Of a stretch of DNA of 64,000 bases, positions 1,685 to 8,418 are shown in pieces. The stretch spans positions 62,001-126,000 of the IMG/VR virus record IMGVR_UViG_3300033153_007973; one strand, 5' to 3'. The position numbers and the translations under genes are program-made. The notes under the pieces were generated by a model, which ran no database searches, was not told the origin of the DNA, and saw nothing but the letters and a program-made list of their open reading frames with translations. Numbering within the stretch: position 1 is the stretch's first letter; the number at the start of each line of letters is the position of its first letter.

Positions 1685-2286
1685 TGCCTATATCTAAGTC
1701 ACATTTTCTTGGTATTCTGAGAGAACGCCGGGACCGGCGCGAGCAAGAGAAGAGACTGGCCACACATGATGATGTATCAAAAGAGAAGAAGAGGAAGAAG
1801 CTTGCCAGGATCTCAATGACCGATGAGGTATTTATGAGATTCCTCACTGGAGAATACTACATAGATCTAGATGATGATATTGTCATAGAAAGAATGTGGA
1901 TTGAGAACCAATATGTGGAGGCCAAAATAAATATCGTTATATCAGGGGAGAGTCTGAAAGTAGGTTATACTACGCCAAATGCAAGTATCCCGGAGTTCTC
2001 TATGGATATACAGACTTCGAATTCCAAGCCAATCTCGCGCGGACAGGTTGACGTCACCGAATGTCCTGGTATAATGGGAGTTAGAGCGAAAACCAGAGGT
2101 GAGATCAAGATAGTCGAGAGACTCCTTGATCTCGATAAGAATGCGGTTGATGCAGATAGTGATATGATAAGTATGGCTGCTCAGCGTCTTATTGGTGATA
2201 TTCCTAATATATCTAACGAGGTTGCTGAGATGATCATCAGAGAGCTTTTGGAAGGAGAAGAAAGAACGACACATGATGTGGTATAA
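1684..2286 (+). CDS. hypothetical protein
   Basis: 200-aa ORF coupled by TAATG. Confidence 0.7.
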   Translation: MPISKSHFLGILRERRDRREQEKRLATHDDVSKEKKRKKLARISMTDEVFMRFLTGEYYIDLDDDIVIERMWIENQYVEAKINIVISGESLKVGYTTPNASIPEFSMDIQTSNSKPISRGQVDVTECPGIMGVRAKTRGEIKIVERLLDLDKNAVDADSDMISMAAQRLIGDIPNISNEVAEMIIRELLEGEERTTHDVV

Positions 2287-2289
2287 TAT

Positions 2290-2571
2290 TGCCTTATGGC
2301 GGAAAGGGAGACGCAGGAGGGTAGGTGAGAGCACCAGCATCTGTGGCCAGGATGCTACACGACTGTGACAAGCAGGAGAGCAAACACCGTTAGCTTGGAG
2401 GATGAGCGGGATCCAAAGGGTGAGCGCGGACACCTACAGTGGTATGTCAGTGAGAAGAGCAGAAGTGTATGACCCAAAGTAAATGGCCTATGCTGACATG
2501 AAGCCGAGAATCTTGTCCGGCCAGATACCCACAAAAAGGTGCTCATTCCAGTTCGAGTCTGGATAAGGCAA
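2290..2571 (+). ncRNA. ~280-nt structured RNA with tRNA-like acceptor, D and T arms
   Basis: TGCCTTA/TAAGGCA stem; Leu-type D arm GCGGAAAGGGAGACGC; T arm TCCAG-TTCGAGT-CTGGA; long-range internal helices. Confidence 0.7.
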
Positions 2572-2586
2572 ATGTGTAAAATGATC

Positions 2587-2664
2587 GCGGGACGGCATAA
2601 GAGGCAGGGGAGCCTTGTTGGTTTCATACGCCATCGCCTGACGAGTTCGACTCTCGGTCCCGCT
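2587..2664 (+). tRNA. atypical tRNA, anticodon CAT
   Basis: GCGGGAC/GTCCCGC; TGGT-TTCATAC-GCCA; CGAG-TTCGACT-CTCG; irregular D region. Confidence 0.55.
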
Positions 2665-2668
2665 AACT

Positions 2669-2785
2669 TGTGGGTGGTACGCACCAATAGAAAGGTGTAC
2701 GCGGCAGAGCCACCGGATCGGTCGCGTGGTCCCTCTCAGATGGCCACTGAAACCTTTGTCAGGTTGAATTCCTGACCCACCCACA
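2669..2785 (+). ncRNA. tRNA-like RNA without canonical anticodon arm
   Basis: 9-bp terminal stem TGTGGGTGG/CCACCCACA; T-like arm GTCAGG-TTGAATT-CCTGAC; D-like hairpin GCACC/GGTGT. Confidence 0.6.
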
Positions 2786-2807
2786 TTCTTTTAATAGAGG
2801 AGATAAG

Positions 2808-3323
2808 ATGATACCAACAGAGAGTGCCTGGGACCTGTATTACCGCGTATTCAATGACAATGATGATGTCTATGTGATCACTGATAGTGATGAAGCATAC
2901 TGGGGTAAGGCACACGCCACCCAGACAGGACTTCTGCTATCTCATCCTAACGTAGTGGACAGGTTCTTAGATTGGGATGATATTACGTTTATGGCACATG
3001 ATGGATTCCCTGTCCGCAAGCTGATGGGAGCTGATGGATCAAAGGCGATCGAGAAGACGAATACCAATACGATCGAGGCAGGTATCAGGAAGCTCCTGAC
3101 TAAGAACCCAAGCATCACAGATGGTCCGCGGGTGAAGCAGGCAGTATTCGGAGATCCGTTCCTGGTCGAGAATGTCGAAGCTACTCTGATGAATACATAT
3201 TATCCCGGGAACCACATCTGGGAACCAGAACACGAGGAGCTGATCATCCTCAAGGCGCCGGATGGTGCAGTTGGTCTTCTGTATGAACTGAACCGTATAT
3301 ATCATTTTGATGCGCGGGAGTAG
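2808..3323 (+). CDS. hypothetical protein
   Basis: AGGAG SD; 171 aa; stop codon inside tRNA-Gly. Confidence 0.8.
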   Translation: MIPTESAWDLYYRVFNDNDDVYVITDSDEAYWGKAHATQTGLLLSHPNVVDRFLDWDDITFMAHDGFPVRKLMGADGSKAIEKTNTNTIEAGIRKLLTKNPSITDGPRVKQAVFGDPFLVENVEATLMNTYYPGNHIWEPEHEELIILKAPDGAVGLLYELNRIYHFDARE

Positions 3324-3385
3324 CTCAGGGGTAGAGCGCCTGCTTGCCATGCAGGAGGTCGAGGGTTCGAATCCCTTTTCCCGCT
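3314..3385 (+). tRNA. tRNA-Gly(GCC)
   Basis: cloverleaf; CCTGC-TTGCCAT-GCAGG. Confidence 0.95.
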
Positions 3386-3397
3386 CAGGAGGAAAGA

Positions 3398-3484
3398 ATG
3401 AGAAACGAAGAACAGGAAATACTGAAGATCCTTGGAATTCTCATTTTGACAGGAATTCTTCTTGCAATTTTCTTCTCTTTCTGA
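3398..3484 (+). CDS. 28-aa single-TM peptide MRNEEQEILKILGILILTGILLAIFFSF
   Basis: AGGAGG SD; manual translation. Confidence 0.6.
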   Translation: MRNEEQEILKILGILILTGILLAIFFSF

Positions 3485-3499
3485 TAATATAGATTATAT

Positions 3500-3571
3500 G
3501 CGGATAAGGTGTTAATGGCTGCACGGGAGCCTTCCAAGCTTTCGGATCGGGTTCGATTCCCGATATCCGCT
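3500..3571 (+). tRNA. tRNA-Gly(TCC)
   Basis: cloverleaf; loop CTTCCAA. Confidence 0.93.
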
Positions 3572-3578
3572 CATGAAT

Positions 3579-3652
3579 GGCTGCGTAGCGTAGCGGTCTA
3601 ACGCACCGCCCTGTCAAGGCGGGGATCGACGGTTCGAATCCGTTCGTGGCCG
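3579..3652 (+). tRNA. tRNA-Asp(GTC)
   Basis: cloverleaf; loop CTGTCAA; G73. Confidence 0.95.
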
Positions 3653-3654
3653 AT

Positions 3655-3728
3655 GCACCCTTAGCTCAGCTGGCTAGAGCAAGCGGTCGATAACCGCTAG
3701 GTCCCTGGTTCGAGTCCAGGAGGGTGCA
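3655..3728 (+). tRNA. tRNA-Ile(GAT), C33
   Basis: cloverleaf; AGCGG-TCGATAA-CCGCT. Confidence 0.92.
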
Positions 3729-3729
3729 C

Positions 3730-3954
3730 ATGATTGAGATATTAACTATAGTGGCTGCAATCGCTGAGATTGCTGGTATCTATCTTCTGGGTCAGAAAAA
3801 GAAGCTCGGGTTTATTCTGGGTTCAATTTCTGGTGTGCTCTGGGTCGCCTATACTGTGATAACCGGGAATGCGATCGGTCTTGTAATCGTATGTTCCGTA
3901 ACCTTTGTTCTTAATGGACGAGGATTCTTCAAGTGGAGGAAAGAAGAGACATGA
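3730..3954 (+). CDS. PnuC-like three-helix membrane protein
   Basis: three hydrophobic segments; GIYLLGQKKKLGF...LW...GFFKW pattern resembles half of PnuC. Confidence 0.55.
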   Translation: MIEILTIVAAIAEIAGIYLLGQKKKLGFILGSISGVLWVAYTVITGNAIGLVIVCSVTFVLNGRGFFKWRKEET

Positions 3955-4604
3955 ATACATTCATGAAGATTATCAACAAGATATTTAAGAAGAATCCTGG
4001 AAGAAATAAGTGGATGTTGAAAGCTGCTCAGAATGGTGATGTTCTCCTAATTGGTTGCGATAGATTTACTACCAACCTAACATCTAAGCTTCTTCACGAG
4101 GGAATTATCAAGTTTACTGGTGGAAAGTGGTCTCATTCTGGAATCATCAAGATCATAAGAGGTGAGACCAATGTCATAGAAGCAACCAGTGATGGAGTCA
4201 TAACCACTCCATTATGGAGATATATGACATCTAATGGTATATCATATAACATGAAGATTAAGAGAGTCCAAGAAGAACACATCTCACAAGCAAAGAAAGC
4301 GGCATGCAATGCCAAGAAACACAAGGGCAAAAAGTATGATTATGTAGCAGTGATCAATTTGGCCGGTTATATTCTCTATACGAAACAGAAGAGAAAAGGT
4401 CTATCATTGCCGAATGCAGAAGACATCTTCGGCAGAAACACTCCCGATCTCTTTATTTGTTCAGAGCTTGTTCATGCTGCATATAGAGAAGCTGGAATAT
4501 GTCTGTGTGATTTCGTAGAGGATCCAGATGAACAAGAAGCACTGGTAACTCCTCGAGATCTGGACGAATCCAAATATCTACACGATGTGAGAAAACCTAA
4601 ATAA
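3951..4604 (+). CDS. permuted papain-like NlpC/P60 (YiiX/YaeF-type) cysteine hydrolase
   Basis: GDVLL, WSHSGI, IEAT..GV, KKYDY, FICSELV, VTPRDL with His before Cys. Confidence 0.85.
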   Translation: MNTFMKIINKIFKKNPGRNKWMLKAAQNGDVLLIGCDRFTTNLTSKLLHEGIIKFTGGKWSHSGIIKIIRGETNVIEATSDGVITTPLWRYMTSNGISYNMKIKRVQEEHISQAKKAACNAKKHKGKKYDYVAVINLAGYILYTKQKRKGLSLPNAEDIFGRNTPDLFICSELVHAAYREAGICLCDFVEDPDEQEALVTPRDLDESKYLHDVRKPK

Positions 4605-4854: not shown

Positions 4855-4926
4855 GTCAGGGGTAACTCAATGGTAGAGTGCACGACTGTGACTCGTGTTA
4901 CGGGGGTTCGATTCCCCTTCCTTGAC
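4855..4926 (+). tRNA. tRNA-His(GTG)
   Basis: cloverleaf with encoded G-1:C73; loop CTGTGAC. Confidence 0.93.
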
Positions 4927-7181: not shown

Positions 7182-7228
7182 TTTGCGTCGAATATTTCCG
7201 TAATCGACGCAGATTTTGCGTCGAATAT

Positions 7229-7302
7229 GCGCTCATAGACCAACGGCAGAGTCAAGGGCCTTAAAAGCCCTCAAGTGATGGGTTCGAATCCCTCTGGGCG
7301 CA
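7229..7302 (+). tRNA. tRNA with TAA (Leu) anticodon and short variable loop
   Basis: AGGGC-CTTAAAA-GCCCT; A73; no long V arm. Confidence 0.85.
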
Positions 7303-7312
7303 AAGGAGAACA

Positions 7313-8302: not shown

Positions 8303-8418
8303 GGGCGACATTAATTCAATGGCCAGAGCGAGAGGCACGCGTAGTATGAGGCCTGAGTGAGTTATAGAAATGGGACAGCTTGTCCCTATGTGCGGGTTCG
8401 AATCCCGCATGTCGCCCA
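8303..8418 (+). ncRNA. tRNA-like RNA with two hairpins replacing the anticodon arm
   Basis: GGGCGACAT/ATGTCGCCC; GCGGG-TTCGAAT-CCCGC; D-like TTCAATGGCCAGAG. Confidence 0.65.

What the first reader, a model, noticed from the sequence alone, without database searches (positions are those of the whole stretch)
2290..2571. ~280-nt RNA closed by a tRNA elbow with ~220 nt of structure in place of the anticodon arm
Seen: acceptor TGCCTTA/TAAGGCA, Leu-like D arm and perfect T arm. Inside are GAGCACC/GGTGCTC, ATCTG.GGCC.GGA/TCCGGCCAGAT, GACAAG/CTTGTC, ATGTCAG/CTGACAT, and GGGTA/TACCC crossing the first helix (pseudoknot). There is no G3:U70 (unlike tmRNA), no group I P7 motifs, and no exon pair that rebuilds an anticodon stem. 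An internal frame reads GCA AAC... (ANTVSLED...RSV*). Inference: an undescribed tRNA-mimic ncRNA matured by RNase P/Z, possibly a decoy or a highly divergent tmRNA analogue.
Basis: partly seen in the sequence, partly recalled or inferred. Interest (0 to 1): 0.75.

Follow-up and report, generated by a model that had tools for sequence, protein, structure and literature searches.

The report
Phage tRNA-Leu-like RNA without anticodon arm
This is a real gene for a tRNA-shaped RNA in a 234-kb phage: it keeps the leucine-tRNA "elbow" and acceptor end, has no anticodon arm, carries about 200 extra bases in an enlarged side arm, and belongs to a family found here only in phage DNA and matched by no Rfam family.

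Summary
Window 2290-2571 is closed by a perfect 7-bp acceptor stem, a tRNA-Leu-type D arm and a canonical T arm, around 232 nt of non-tRNA sequence.

It is not a known RNA. Rfam gives no hit, ARAGORN finds no tmRNA, and no group I intron is detected anywhere in the genome. No single deletion rebuilds a canonical anticodon arm.

The new result is that it has relatives:
- The exact 18-nt D-arm word gives tRNA-like genes in 10 of 10 hits in viral contigs. One is a normal tRNA-Leu and nine are non-canonical.
- About a dozen more non-canonical genes turn up in metagenomes.
- None of 31 hits in 185,579 cellular genomes is tRNA-like.
- A covariance model built from ten relatives, without this locus, matches 2290-2571 end to end (34.8 bits).

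Across the family:
- Acceptor and T stems covary, and U48 is invariant.
- A73 is the commonest discriminator (10 of 18).
- A 6-7-bp helix next to the T arm (here GAGCACC/GGUGCUC) encloses an insert of very variable length and sequence.
- A 10-16-nt linker stands where the anticodon arm should be.

Best reading: a non-decoding, tRNA-processed and possibly leucine-accepting phage RNA. Its function is unknown.

The parts
2048..2075 (+). Sigma-70-type promoter TTGACG-16 nt-TATAAT with an upstream TG, inside the 3' part of the upstream ORF. It is the likely start of the transcript that carries this RNA.
   Evidence: 11 of 12 matches, TG present. The same GTTGAC...TGnTATAAT pattern recurs at three other places in the genome. 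That it is the actual transcription start is inferred, not shown.
2290..2571 (+). The whole tRNA-like RNA gene, 282 nt, from acceptor position 1 to discriminator A73. No CCA is encoded.
   Evidence: Model R2 (ten relatives, this locus left out) matches 2290-2571 end to end at 34.8 bits, E 8e-10. A motif scan found the T arm plus a 7-bp closure. ARAGORN -i places its ends at 2289-2572.
2290..2296 (+). Acceptor stem, 5' strand UGCCUUA (U1:A72, C3:G70).
   Evidence: In relatives, 6 of the 7 acceptor pairs show compensatory changes.
2297..2314 (+). U8 G9 and the D arm: stem GCG/CGC and an all-purine loop GAAAGGGAGA holding A14, A15, G18 and G19. This 18-nt word is the hallmark of the family.
   Evidence: The exact word gives 10 of 10 tRNA-like hits in viral contigs and 0 of 31 in cellular genomes.
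2315..2328 (+). Purine-rich linker AGGAGGGUAGGUGA of 14 nt, standing where N26 and the anticodon arm would be.
   Evidence: Relatives have a 10-16-nt linker of unrelated sequence at the same place. In L129 it is a shrunken 4-bp/7-nt hairpin (my reading of the sequence). No hairpin can form here.
2329..2335 (+). 5' strand GAGCACC of the closing helix, read as the stem of the enlarged variable arm.
   Evidence: The fold constrained to the tRNA frame plus this helix is -82.2 kcal/mol, against an unconstrained minimum of -83.6.
2336..2537 (+). Lineage-specific insert of 202 nt. Its internal structure is uncertain. It ends in the A-rich stretch ACAAAAA (2531-2537).
   Evidence: No Rfam family. No similar sequence in phage records, viral contigs or this genome. 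The inserts of relatives share no words beyond chance. A-rich 3' end: 44 of 84 positions across 12 members against a 30% background, p 1.6e-5.
2538..2544 (+). 3' strand GGUGCUC of the closing helix.
2545..2546 (+). A47 and U48. U48 is the expected partner of A15 (the Levitt pair).
   Evidence: The position before the T stem is U in 18 of 18 family members. The role of A15:U48 in leucine identity is from PMC9976931.
2547..2563 (+). T arm: stem UCCAG/CUGGA and loop UUCGAGU (U54 U55 C56 A58).
   Evidence: T-stem pairs covary in relatives, many of which have a sixth pair.
2564..2571 (+). Acceptor stem 3' strand UAAGGCA and discriminator A73.
   Evidence: The discriminator is A in 10 of 18 family members.

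Best explanation
Window 2290-2571 encodes a non-decoding tRNA-like RNA descended from a phage tRNA-Leu.

Shown:
- It keeps the parts that build the tRNA elbow and acceptor end: a 7-bp acceptor stem, U8, a Leu-type D arm with A14, A15, G18 and G19, U48, a canonical T arm and A73.
- Relatives in other phages keep the same parts, with compensatory changes in the stems.
- The anticodon arm is gone, replaced by a 14-nt linker.
- The helix GAGCACC/GGUGCUC next to the T arm corresponds to the variable-arm stem. Here it encloses 202 nt found nowhere else.

Inferred:
- The RNA is transcribed from the promoter at 2048-2075, together with two further tRNA-like RNAs and the tRNA array.
- It is cut out by host RNase P and the 3' tRNA-processing enzymes and receives CCA from the host. 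The phage encodes no CCA-adding enzyme.
- It keeps the set of features that E. coli LeuRS needs, and that enzyme does not use the anticodon or the variable arm. It could therefore be charged with leucine, yet it cannot read a codon.

My best guess for its role is that the tRNA frame serves as a processing and stabilising scaffold, and perhaps a leucine-accepting handle, that presents a fast-evolving RNA insert. The insert could act as a decoy or sponge in the conflict between phage and host. The role is a guess. The architecture and family membership are the supported part.
For: - Architecture at the stated coordinates.
- Not a canonical tRNA, tmRNA or group I intron.
- No deletion restores a canonical tRNA. 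For this locus there are 0 solutions with a perfect stem (null 0.36) and 4 with one mismatch allowed (null mean 18). None of the non-canonical relatives has a solution except L092 (one, at the shuffle rate), while the two canonical tRNA-Leu controls pass.
- The family is found in viral DNA only. The D-arm word gives 10 of 10 tRNA-like hits in viral contigs, 9 of them non-canonical, about 12 non-canonical hits in metagenomes, and 0 of 31 in cellular genomes.
- A cultured member exists in Enterococcus phage VRE9_1, unannotated, at the head of its tRNA array. It scores 43.8 bits on model R1, against 24 bits for that phage's own tRNA-Leu.
- Covariation in acceptor and T stems.
- Model R2, built without this locus, matches 2290-2571 end to end at 34.8 bits.
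- The closing helix is anchored next to the T arm, Fisher p 5e-6, with a consistent 10-16-nt linker.
- U48 is invariant, A73 is the majority discriminator, and an A-rich stretch precedes the 3' strand of the helix.
- The tRNA-frame fold lies within 1.4 kcal/mol of the minimum free energy.
- Promoter.
- No PF01743 CCA enzyme and no class Ia synthetase in the phage.
Against: - No transcript data exist. No sequencing run could be listed for this locus. RNA contigs near relative L074 cover only the neighbouring ROOL RNA.
- This phage has no close relatives, so selection on this copy and on its 202-nt insert cannot be tested. The insert could be recent junk inside a functional frame.
- The discriminator is not A in 8 of 18 family members, so leucine charging is not a universal family property.
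- Overall folding energy is not better than shuffles.
- The family was collected with an exact D-arm word. D-arm invariance is therefore by construction, and the true breadth of the family is unknown.
- No conserved neighbouring protein and no cis-antisense target was found that would point to a role.
Confidence: 0.6

Rival explanations
1. It is a tRNA gene interrupted by an intron. The intron would either splice itself, or be cut out by a nuclease or ribozyme and the halves joined by the phage's RtcB ligase, giving a decoding tRNA. ARAGORN suggests Thr(GGU), the one Thr isoacceptor the phage lacks.
For: - ARAGORN -i calls 2289-2572 a tRNA-Thr(GGU) with a 199-nt intron.
- The phage has Thr(UGU) and Thr(CGU) but not Thr(GGU).
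- It encodes an RtcB ligase at 219 bits.
- Elsewhere in the genome, canonical tRNA-Gly(CCC) halves are split by 276 nt.
Against: - The ARAGORN model has A33 instead of U33, an A.A mismatch in the anticodon stem, a 16-nt unpaired variable region and a Leu-type D arm.
- An exhaustive scan of single deletions gives no canonical anticodon arm, fewer solutions than shuffled sequence gives.
- The same is true of the relatives. Several have only about 55 nt between the D and T arms, too little for an intron plus two arms.
- No group I signal at E up to 10 in the locus or the genome.
- No splicing endonuclease and no archease in the phage.
Confidence: 0.07
2. It is a tmRNA-like rescue RNA. A charged tRNA-like domain would enter stalled ribosomes, and the internal frame GCA AAC ... 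(30 codons) would be translated as a tag.
For: - The overall layout resembles tmRNA: the tRNA-like ends close a long structured middle, and a helix abuts the T arm.
- An open frame begins with GCA at 2380 and ends at 2472.
Against: - C3:G70, not G3:U70.
- A true D stem is present.
- The Rfam tmRNA models give no hit even at E up to 10, and ARAGORN finds no tmRNA.
- The pseudoknot is unsupported.
- Family members with 54-58-nt middles cannot hold a tag frame.
- The tag would end in KSRSV, unlike known degradation tags (my own knowledge).
- The phage encodes no SmpB.
Confidence: 0.03
3. It is a dead or dying tRNA-Leu gene, wrecked by an insertion and without a function of its own. It would be kept only because it lies inside a transcribed tRNA cluster.
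For: - No relatives of this phage are available to show selection on this copy.
- The insert is unique, and the RNA is no more stable than shuffles.
- The cluster holds other odd tRNA-like pieces.
Against: - Every pair of the acceptor, D, T and closing helices is intact, and all tertiary-contact bases are in place.
- The same anticodon-less design recurs in about 20 unrelated phage contigs, with compensatory changes in the stems and invariant U48. That is the opposite of decay.
- Non-canonical copies outnumber canonical ones 9 to 1 among viral hits.
Confidence: 0.15
4. It acts in cis. The tRNA-shaped fold would be a processing or punctuation signal, or an RNase P entry site, that separates the upstream mRNA from the downstream tRNA array. 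Alternatively it is an RNase P-matured antisense regulator like the P1 C4 or P4 CI RNAs.
For: - It lies 4 nt after the stop codon of the upstream ORF and heads the array.
- Many relatives sit alone at the start of runs of small ORFs rather than among tRNAs.
Against: - Complementarity between the inserts and the 600 nt on either side is no better than for shuffled inserts, in this locus and in 16 of 17 relatives.
- A punctuation signal would not need a conserved D arm, U48 and A73, nor a 200-nt insert.
Confidence: 0.1

Closest known systems
Bacterial and phage type II tRNA-Leu
   Same: - Same acceptor, D-arm and T-arm design.
- Same tertiary bases: U8, A14, A15, G18, G19, U48, U54, U55, C56 and A58.
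- A73 is present.
- Canonical tRNA-Leu(CAA) and tRNA-Leu(UAG) genes with the identical D arm exist in the same sequence pools (L025, L070/L128).
   Different: - No anticodon arm.
- The variable arm is enlarged to 216 nt.
- Not recognised by the Rfam tRNA model or by ARAGORN in its default mode.
Minimalist tRNA-Leu made in the laboratory (Larkin et al. 2002, as summarised in PMC9976931)
   Same: [quoted passage not shown] The natural RNA here keeps exactly those parts.
   Different: Those are engineered deletions. Here the anticodon arm is lost in nature and a large insert is added. Charging has not been tested.
tmRNA (SsrA)
   Same: tRNA-like ends close a long structured middle, a helix abuts the T arm, and maturation uses tRNA enzymes.
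   Different: - Leu-type rather than Ala-type: C3:G70 and a real D stem.
- No supported pseudoknots or tag frame.
- No match to the tmRNA models.
- Short family members have no coding capacity.
Bacterial Y RNA-like YrlA (PMC4201824)
   Same: A non-coding RNA with a module that mimics the tRNA D and T arms. Some are phage-encoded.
   Different: In YrlA the RNA's own 5' and 3' ends form the Ro-binding stem and the tRNA-like part is internal (my own knowledge of that paper). Here the ends form the acceptor stem. There is no Rfam hit.
Small stable RNAs in phage tRNA clusters (T4 species 1 and 2), RNase P-matured phage regulators (P1 C4, P4 CI), and tRNA-Other of Bacillus cereus (the last mentioned in PMC5389517)
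   Same: Non-decoding RNAs that use tRNA-like features to be processed, or in the case of tRNA-Other to be charged. Some are encoded beside tRNA genes.
   Different: They have different sequences and folds. None has a Leu-type frame with an enlarged variable arm. The comparison with T4, P1 and P4 rests on my own knowledge, not on a test made here.
Engineered tRNA scaffolds for expressing recombinant RNA (my own knowledge)
   Same: A tRNA frame carries a foreign RNA in place of one arm, which gives correct processing and stability.
   Different: Those scaffolds are man-made and put the cargo in the anticodon arm. Here the cargo sits in the variable arm and the design is natural.

Membership tests
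Canonical tRNA (Rfam RF00005) | A cloverleaf with a 5-bp anticodon stem and a 7-nt loop, recognised by tRNA models. | tested here: not met
   No RF00005 hit at 2290-2571 even at E up to 10. ARAGORN in default mode is silent.
tRNA with a group I intron in the anticodon loop | A group I catalytic core. | tested here: not met
   RF00028 gives no hit at E up to 10 in the locus or anywhere in the genome. The model is known to miss some subgroups (my own knowledge).
tRNA with an intron of any kind | Removing one segment restores a canonical anticodon arm with U33 and a purine at 37. | tested here: not met
   0 solutions with a perfect stem (null 0.36), and 4 with one mismatch allowed against a null mean of 18. 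ARAGORN's Thr(GGU) model has A33 and an A.A mismatch.
tmRNA | A G3:U70 pair for alanine charging. | tested here: not met
   Position 3:70 is C:G.
tmRNA | A match to the tmRNA covariance models or the ARAGORN tmRNA search. | tested here: not met
   At a lowered ARAGORN threshold only implausible permuted calls appear.
tmRNA | A tag reading frame framed by pseudoknots. | tested here: inconclusive
   A 30-codon frame exists at 2380-2472, which is within chance. The pseudoknot is not supported.
Phage tRNA-Leu-like RNAs without an anticodon arm (family defined here) | The D-arm word UGGCGGAAAGGGAGACGC directly after a 7-bp acceptor strand. | tested here: met
   Identical at 2297-2314.
Phage tRNA-Leu-like RNAs without an anticodon arm (family defined here) | An end-to-end match to a model built from other members. 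| tested here: met
   R2 matches 2290-2571 at 34.8 bits, E 8e-10, over model positions 1-155. The shorter model R1 matched only the 5' frame, because it cannot span the insert.
Phage tRNA-Leu-like RNAs without an anticodon arm (family defined here) | A 10-16-nt linker, then a 6-7-bp helix whose 3' strand ends 2-3 nt before the T stem, with an A-rich run before that strand and U48 after it. | tested here: met
   The linker is 14 nt, the helix 7 bp, the A-rich run ACAAAAA and the tail AU.
Leucine-accepting RNA (LeuRS substrate) | A73, A15:U48, G18G19 and intact D/T-loop contacts. | tested here: met
   All are present in the sequence. The criteria come from PMC9976931. Whether the RNA is actually charged cannot be tested with these tools.
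ROOL, GOLLD, HDV-like and other Rfam ribozyme or ornate RNA families | A match to the family model. | tested here: not met
   No hit in 2200-3350 at E up to 10. A ROOL RNA does lie near relative L074. Theta-ribozyme descriptors were not run.

The most novel reading that the evidence does not exclude
Phages carry a so far undescribed class of natural "tRNA scaffolds". These are leucine-tRNA frames that have given up decoding but can still be processed, and perhaps charged with leucine. They present a fast-evolving RNA insert that acts against the host, for example as a decoy for tRNA-directed defence enzymes or as a sponge for a host factor. This locus carries the largest insert seen.
Probability: 0.25. 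Interest if true: 0.8.

Novelty: new variant of a known kind. Interest (0 to 1): 0.62.

Why it matters
tRNA-shaped RNAs that do not decode, such as tmRNA, Y RNA-like RNAs and viral tRNA-like ends, have each opened a piece of biology. This finding adds a recurrent design found only in phage DNA: a leucine-type elbow and acceptor end, no anticodon arm, and an insert that varies widely. tRNA finders and Rfam miss it, and in deposited phage genomes it is left unannotated or covered by spurious small ORFs.

If these RNAs are processed and charged, they would be non-decoding leucyl-RNAs made during infection. That bears on how phages handle tRNA-directed defences and the host's translation machinery. 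It would also give a natural precedent for the tRNA scaffolds used in RNA engineering.

A cultured Enterococcus phage carries a member, so the question can be tested at the bench.

Tried and rejected
- **Known RNA families.** Rfam at gathering score and at E up to 10, ARAGORN tRNA and tmRNA searches, and RF00028 over the whole genome gave nothing at the locus.
- **Close relatives of this phage.** I searched with both flanking proteins in viral contigs, with the upstream protein in the 5.8-billion protein set, with blastn against phage records, and with an exact 33-mer. All found only the phage itself. Terminase relatives are at most 67% identical, and their contigs are short or end before this region.
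- **Intron hypothesis.** Exhaustive deletion scans on this locus and on the family found no solutions. By eye, the bulge-helix-bulge motif and the group I splice-site rules do not fit.
- **Pseudoknot.** Pairing between linker and insert is at shuffle level across 11 members.
- **Shared insert motif.** Words shared among 18 inserts are at the null level. A GGGUAGG word seen by eye in four inserts is not significant.
- **Cis-antisense regulator.** There is no excess complementarity to 600-nt flanks, except a 10-nt match in L131.
- **Conserved neighbouring protein.** Ten downstream or adjacent ORFs of relatives gave nothing consistent.
- **Expression evidence.** No run was listed for this locus. 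Metatranscriptome contigs near relative L074 cover the ROOL RNA only.
- **Phage-encoded partners.** No CCA-adding enzyme, class Ia synthetase, splicing endonuclease, archease, SmpB or L/F-transferase was found. Only RtcB is present.
- **Paralogues in the genome.** There are none. The one notable match is a 12-nt identity to the tRNA-His anticodon arm.

Full report
**Setting**

The window is bases 62001-126000 of a 234,008-bp viral record with direct terminal repeats. The record carries terminase, portal and major head protein genes. It has 31 canonical tRNA genes in two clusters. The finding lies 4 nt after the stop codon of a 200-aa ORF, at the head of the second tRNA cluster. A strong sigma-70-type promoter, TTGACG-16 nt-TGgTATAAT, sits at 2048-2075. 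The same promoter pattern recurs elsewhere in the genome.

**What is there**

- Bases 2290-2296 pair perfectly with 2564-2570 as an acceptor stem.
- U8 G9 follow, and then a three-pair D stem with the loop GAAAGGGAGA.
- Bases 2547-2563 form a T arm with the loop UUCGAGU.
- Base 2571 is an A at the discriminator position.
- Between the D and T arms lie 232 nt that are not tRNA.

No known family matches this stretch:

- Rfam reports nothing, at curated thresholds or at E up to 10.
- ARAGORN in its default mode calls neither a tRNA nor a tmRNA.
- The Rfam group I intron model finds nothing in the whole genome.

**Is it a split tRNA?**

With introns allowed, ARAGORN calls a tRNA-Thr(GGU) with a 199-nt intron. 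Its model is poor:

- A at position 33
- an A.A mismatch in the anticodon stem
- a 16-nt unpaired variable region
- a Leu-type D arm

I enumerated every single deletion that could leave a 5-bp anticodon stem and a 7-nt loop with U33 and a purine at 37.

- With a perfect stem there are no solutions. Shuffled sequence gives 0.36 on average.
- With one mismatch allowed there are four distinct solutions. Shuffles give 18 on average.

The phage does encode an RtcB ligase. It has no splicing endonuclease and no archease.

**Relatives**

The phage itself is nearly an orphan.

- The flanking proteins, blastn against phage records and an exact 33-mer found only the phage itself.
- The nearest terminase relatives are 67% and about 40% identical. 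Their contigs do not reach this region.

Scanning for the exact 17-18-nt D-arm word was productive.

| Collection | Hits to the D-arm word | tRNA-like among them |
|---|---|---|
| Viral contigs | 10 | 10: one canonical tRNA-Leu(UAG), nine non-canonical |
| Metagenome contigs (first 120 hits) | 120 | two canonical tRNA-Leu, one with an eight-base anticodon loop, about a dozen non-canonical |
| 185,579 species-representative cellular genomes | 31 | none; all look like chance matches in other sequence |

One further member lies unannotated in the cultured Enterococcus phage VRE9_1, at the head of its tRNA array and under a spurious 41-aa ORF. It scores 43.8 bits on the family model, against 24 bits for that phage's own tRNA-Leu.

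**What the family shares**

An alignment of twelve members shows compensatory changes in six of the seven acceptor pairs and in the T stem. Many members have a sixth T-stem pair. Other shared features:

- The base before the T stem is U in 18 of 18 members. It is the expected partner of A15.
- The discriminator is A in 10 of 18.
- A 6-7-bp helix has its 3' strand ending two or three bases before the T stem. The combined p over 17 members against shuffles is 5e-6.
- In ten members, this locus included, the 5' strand of that helix begins 10-16 nt after the D stem.
- The seven bases before its 3' strand are A-rich: 52% against a 30% background, p 1.6e-5.
- A nearly canonical member (L127) has the same A-rich 3' side in its ordinary variable loop (my reading of the sequence). 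I therefore read the helix as the variable-arm stem.
- The 10-16-nt linker is what remains of the anticodon arm. In L129 it is still a shrunken hairpin (my reading).

The inserts enclosed by the helix range from 24 to 202 nt and share no words beyond chance. In none of the non-canonical members does a deletion restore a canonical tRNA, apart from one solution in L092 that is at the shuffle rate. The two canonical controls pass.

**Membership of this locus**

A covariance model built from ten members without this locus, searched with filters off, matches 2290-2571 end to end at 34.8 bits, E 8e-10. The next hit in 8 kb scores 14.4 bits. This locus has the following:

- the identical D arm
- a 14-nt linker (2315-2328)
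- the 7-bp helix GAGCACC/GGUGCUC (2329-2335 with 2538-2544)
- the run ACAAAAA before the 3' strand of the helix
- A47 and U48
- a 5-bp T stem
- A73

Folding with the tRNA frame and this helix enforced costs only 1.4 kcal/mol relative to the unconstrained minimum.

**What is not supported**

In this locus a 7-bp alternative competes, 2321-2327 with 2431-2437. In the constrained fold, UACCC pairs with GGGUG at 2418-2422.
- The bulged helix ATCTG.GGCC.GGA/TCCGGCCAGAT overlaps two of the other proposed helices.
- The insert holds somewhat more short perfect helices than shuffles (p 0.01-0.03). The RNA as a whole is not unusually stable (z -0.31).
- The tmRNA idea fails on G3:U70, on the presence of a D stem and on the tmRNA models. 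Short family members also cannot hold a tag frame. The phage has no SmpB.

**How it probably works**

The architecture, the family membership and the lack of decoding capacity are shown. The rest is inferred.

- The RNA is probably transcribed from the promoter at 2048-2075, with two more tRNA-like RNAs that fill the rest of the 520-nt gap and with the tRNA array.
- Host RNase P and the 3' tRNA-processing enzymes probably release it.
- The host probably adds CCA. None is encoded, and the phage has no PF01743 enzyme.

For E. coli LeuRS the decisive features are A73, the A15:U48 pair, G18G19 and the D/T-loop contacts. The anticodon and the long variable arm are dispensable, and truncated tRNA-Leu lacking both arms is still charged (PMC9976931). 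This RNA keeps exactly that set, so leucine charging is plausible for it. Eight of 18 members have another discriminator, so charging may not be general across the family.

I found no conserved protein neighbour, no cis-antisense target and no phage-encoded partner. The role is open. My best guess is a tRNA frame that presents a fast-evolving insert in the conflict with the host. I give that guess low confidence.

**Novelty**

Searches of the paper library for phage tRNA introns, tRNA-like phage RNAs, ROOL/GOLLD neighbours and theta ribozymes found no description of this design. The nearest described things are listed below. The T4, P1 and P4 comparisons rest on my own knowledge.

- tmRNA
- YrlA
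- tRNA-Other
- the small stable RNAs of T4
- the RNase P-matured P1 and P4 regulators
- laboratory minimal tRNA-Leu
- engineered tRNA scaffolds

I rate the locus as a new variant of a known kind, tRNA mimics, and a real feature. Its ends and family are well supported. Its insert structure and its function are unknown.

Noticed in passing
window 2587-2664: A 78-nt tRNA-like minihelix lies 15 nt after the finding. It has the acceptor GCGGGAC/GUCCCGC, a 4-bp T stem with loop UUCGACU, no D arm and one long inner hairpin. Neither ARAGORN nor Rfam calls it.
   Followed up: partly
window 2670-2786: A 117-nt RNA is closed by an 8-bp acceptor GUGGGUGG/CCACCCAC and a 6-bp T stem GUCAGG/CCUGAC with the odd loop UUGAAUU, and has three inner hairpins. 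It gives a weak hit to family model R2 (9.3 bits). Together with the finding and the minihelix it fills the whole gap 2287-2807.
   Followed up: partly
window 8305-8415: A 111-nt tRNA-like gene lies between tRNA-Leu(CAG) and tRNA-Val. It has good acceptor, D-loop, long variable hairpin and T arm but no canonical anticodon arm. It is missed by ARAGORN and Rfam and scores 10-14 bits on the family models.
   Followed up: partly
outside the window: genome 210503-210854, minus strand (L002 about 1003-1355): Canonical tRNA-Gly(CCC) halves are separated by 276 nt at position 37/38. Inside the intervening part, a second 5' strand GGGGUAG pairs with the same 3' strand. That gives a 101-nt RNA with G3:U70, which the Rfam tmRNA model matches in part (33 bits, below its threshold). 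There is no group I signal.
   Followed up: partly
outside the window: genome 12881-13909, minus strand (L170): The phage encodes an RtcB RNA ligase (219 bits) among its first tRNA cluster. No archease, splicing endonuclease or CCA-adding enzyme was found.
   Followed up: partly
L092 about 3070-4250: A metagenomic phage contig has several tRNA genes of 113-146 nt. Three carry inserts of 52 or 66 nt just before the anticodon loop, with a repeated motif CGGGCCG...GGUUAUCG. The end of the motif seems to form the true anticodon stem. No Rfam family other than tRNA matches.
   Followed up: partly
L074 235-812 and 1044-1152: A ROOL RNA (368 bits) sits directly between two tRNA genes, 230 nt upstream of a family member. 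RNA contigs from pig-gut metatranscriptomes cover a close variant of the ROOL RNA (about 90-99% identical) but not the family member.
   Followed up: partly
L127 2912-2999; also L013 and L068: Some genes with the same Leu-type frame have an otherwise normal anticodon arm with an eight-base loop. ARAGORN gives L127 a four-base anticodon, AUAC. They may be quadruplet-reading or otherwise odd tRNAs.
   Followed up: no
L171 1496-1590 (PP680567.1 99812-99906) and L171 1160-1430: Enterococcus phage VRE9_1 has an unannotated family member under a spurious 41-aa ORF. Further odd tRNA-like hairpins lie just upstream, after a TGTTATAAT box, at the head of its tRNA array. Related Enterococcus phages share only the 3' part.
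   Followed up: partly
window 2358-2369 and 4881-4892: Twelve bases of the insert, CACGACUGUGAC, are identical to the 5' strand plus loop of this phage's tRNA-His anticodon arm. The matching 3' strand is absent. This may be chance (blastn E about 3).
   Followed up: no
window 7228-7303: The gene called tRNA-Leu(UAA) has a short variable loop (class I shape) and U1:A72 with A73, unlike the phage's other three tRNA-Leu genes.
   Followed up: no
P0004, P0006, P0032, P0046 (terminase relatives): Several distant relatives of the large terminase are about 1,000 aa long and carry intein and LAGLIDADG domains. The window's own terminase (596 aa) has none.
   Followed up: no
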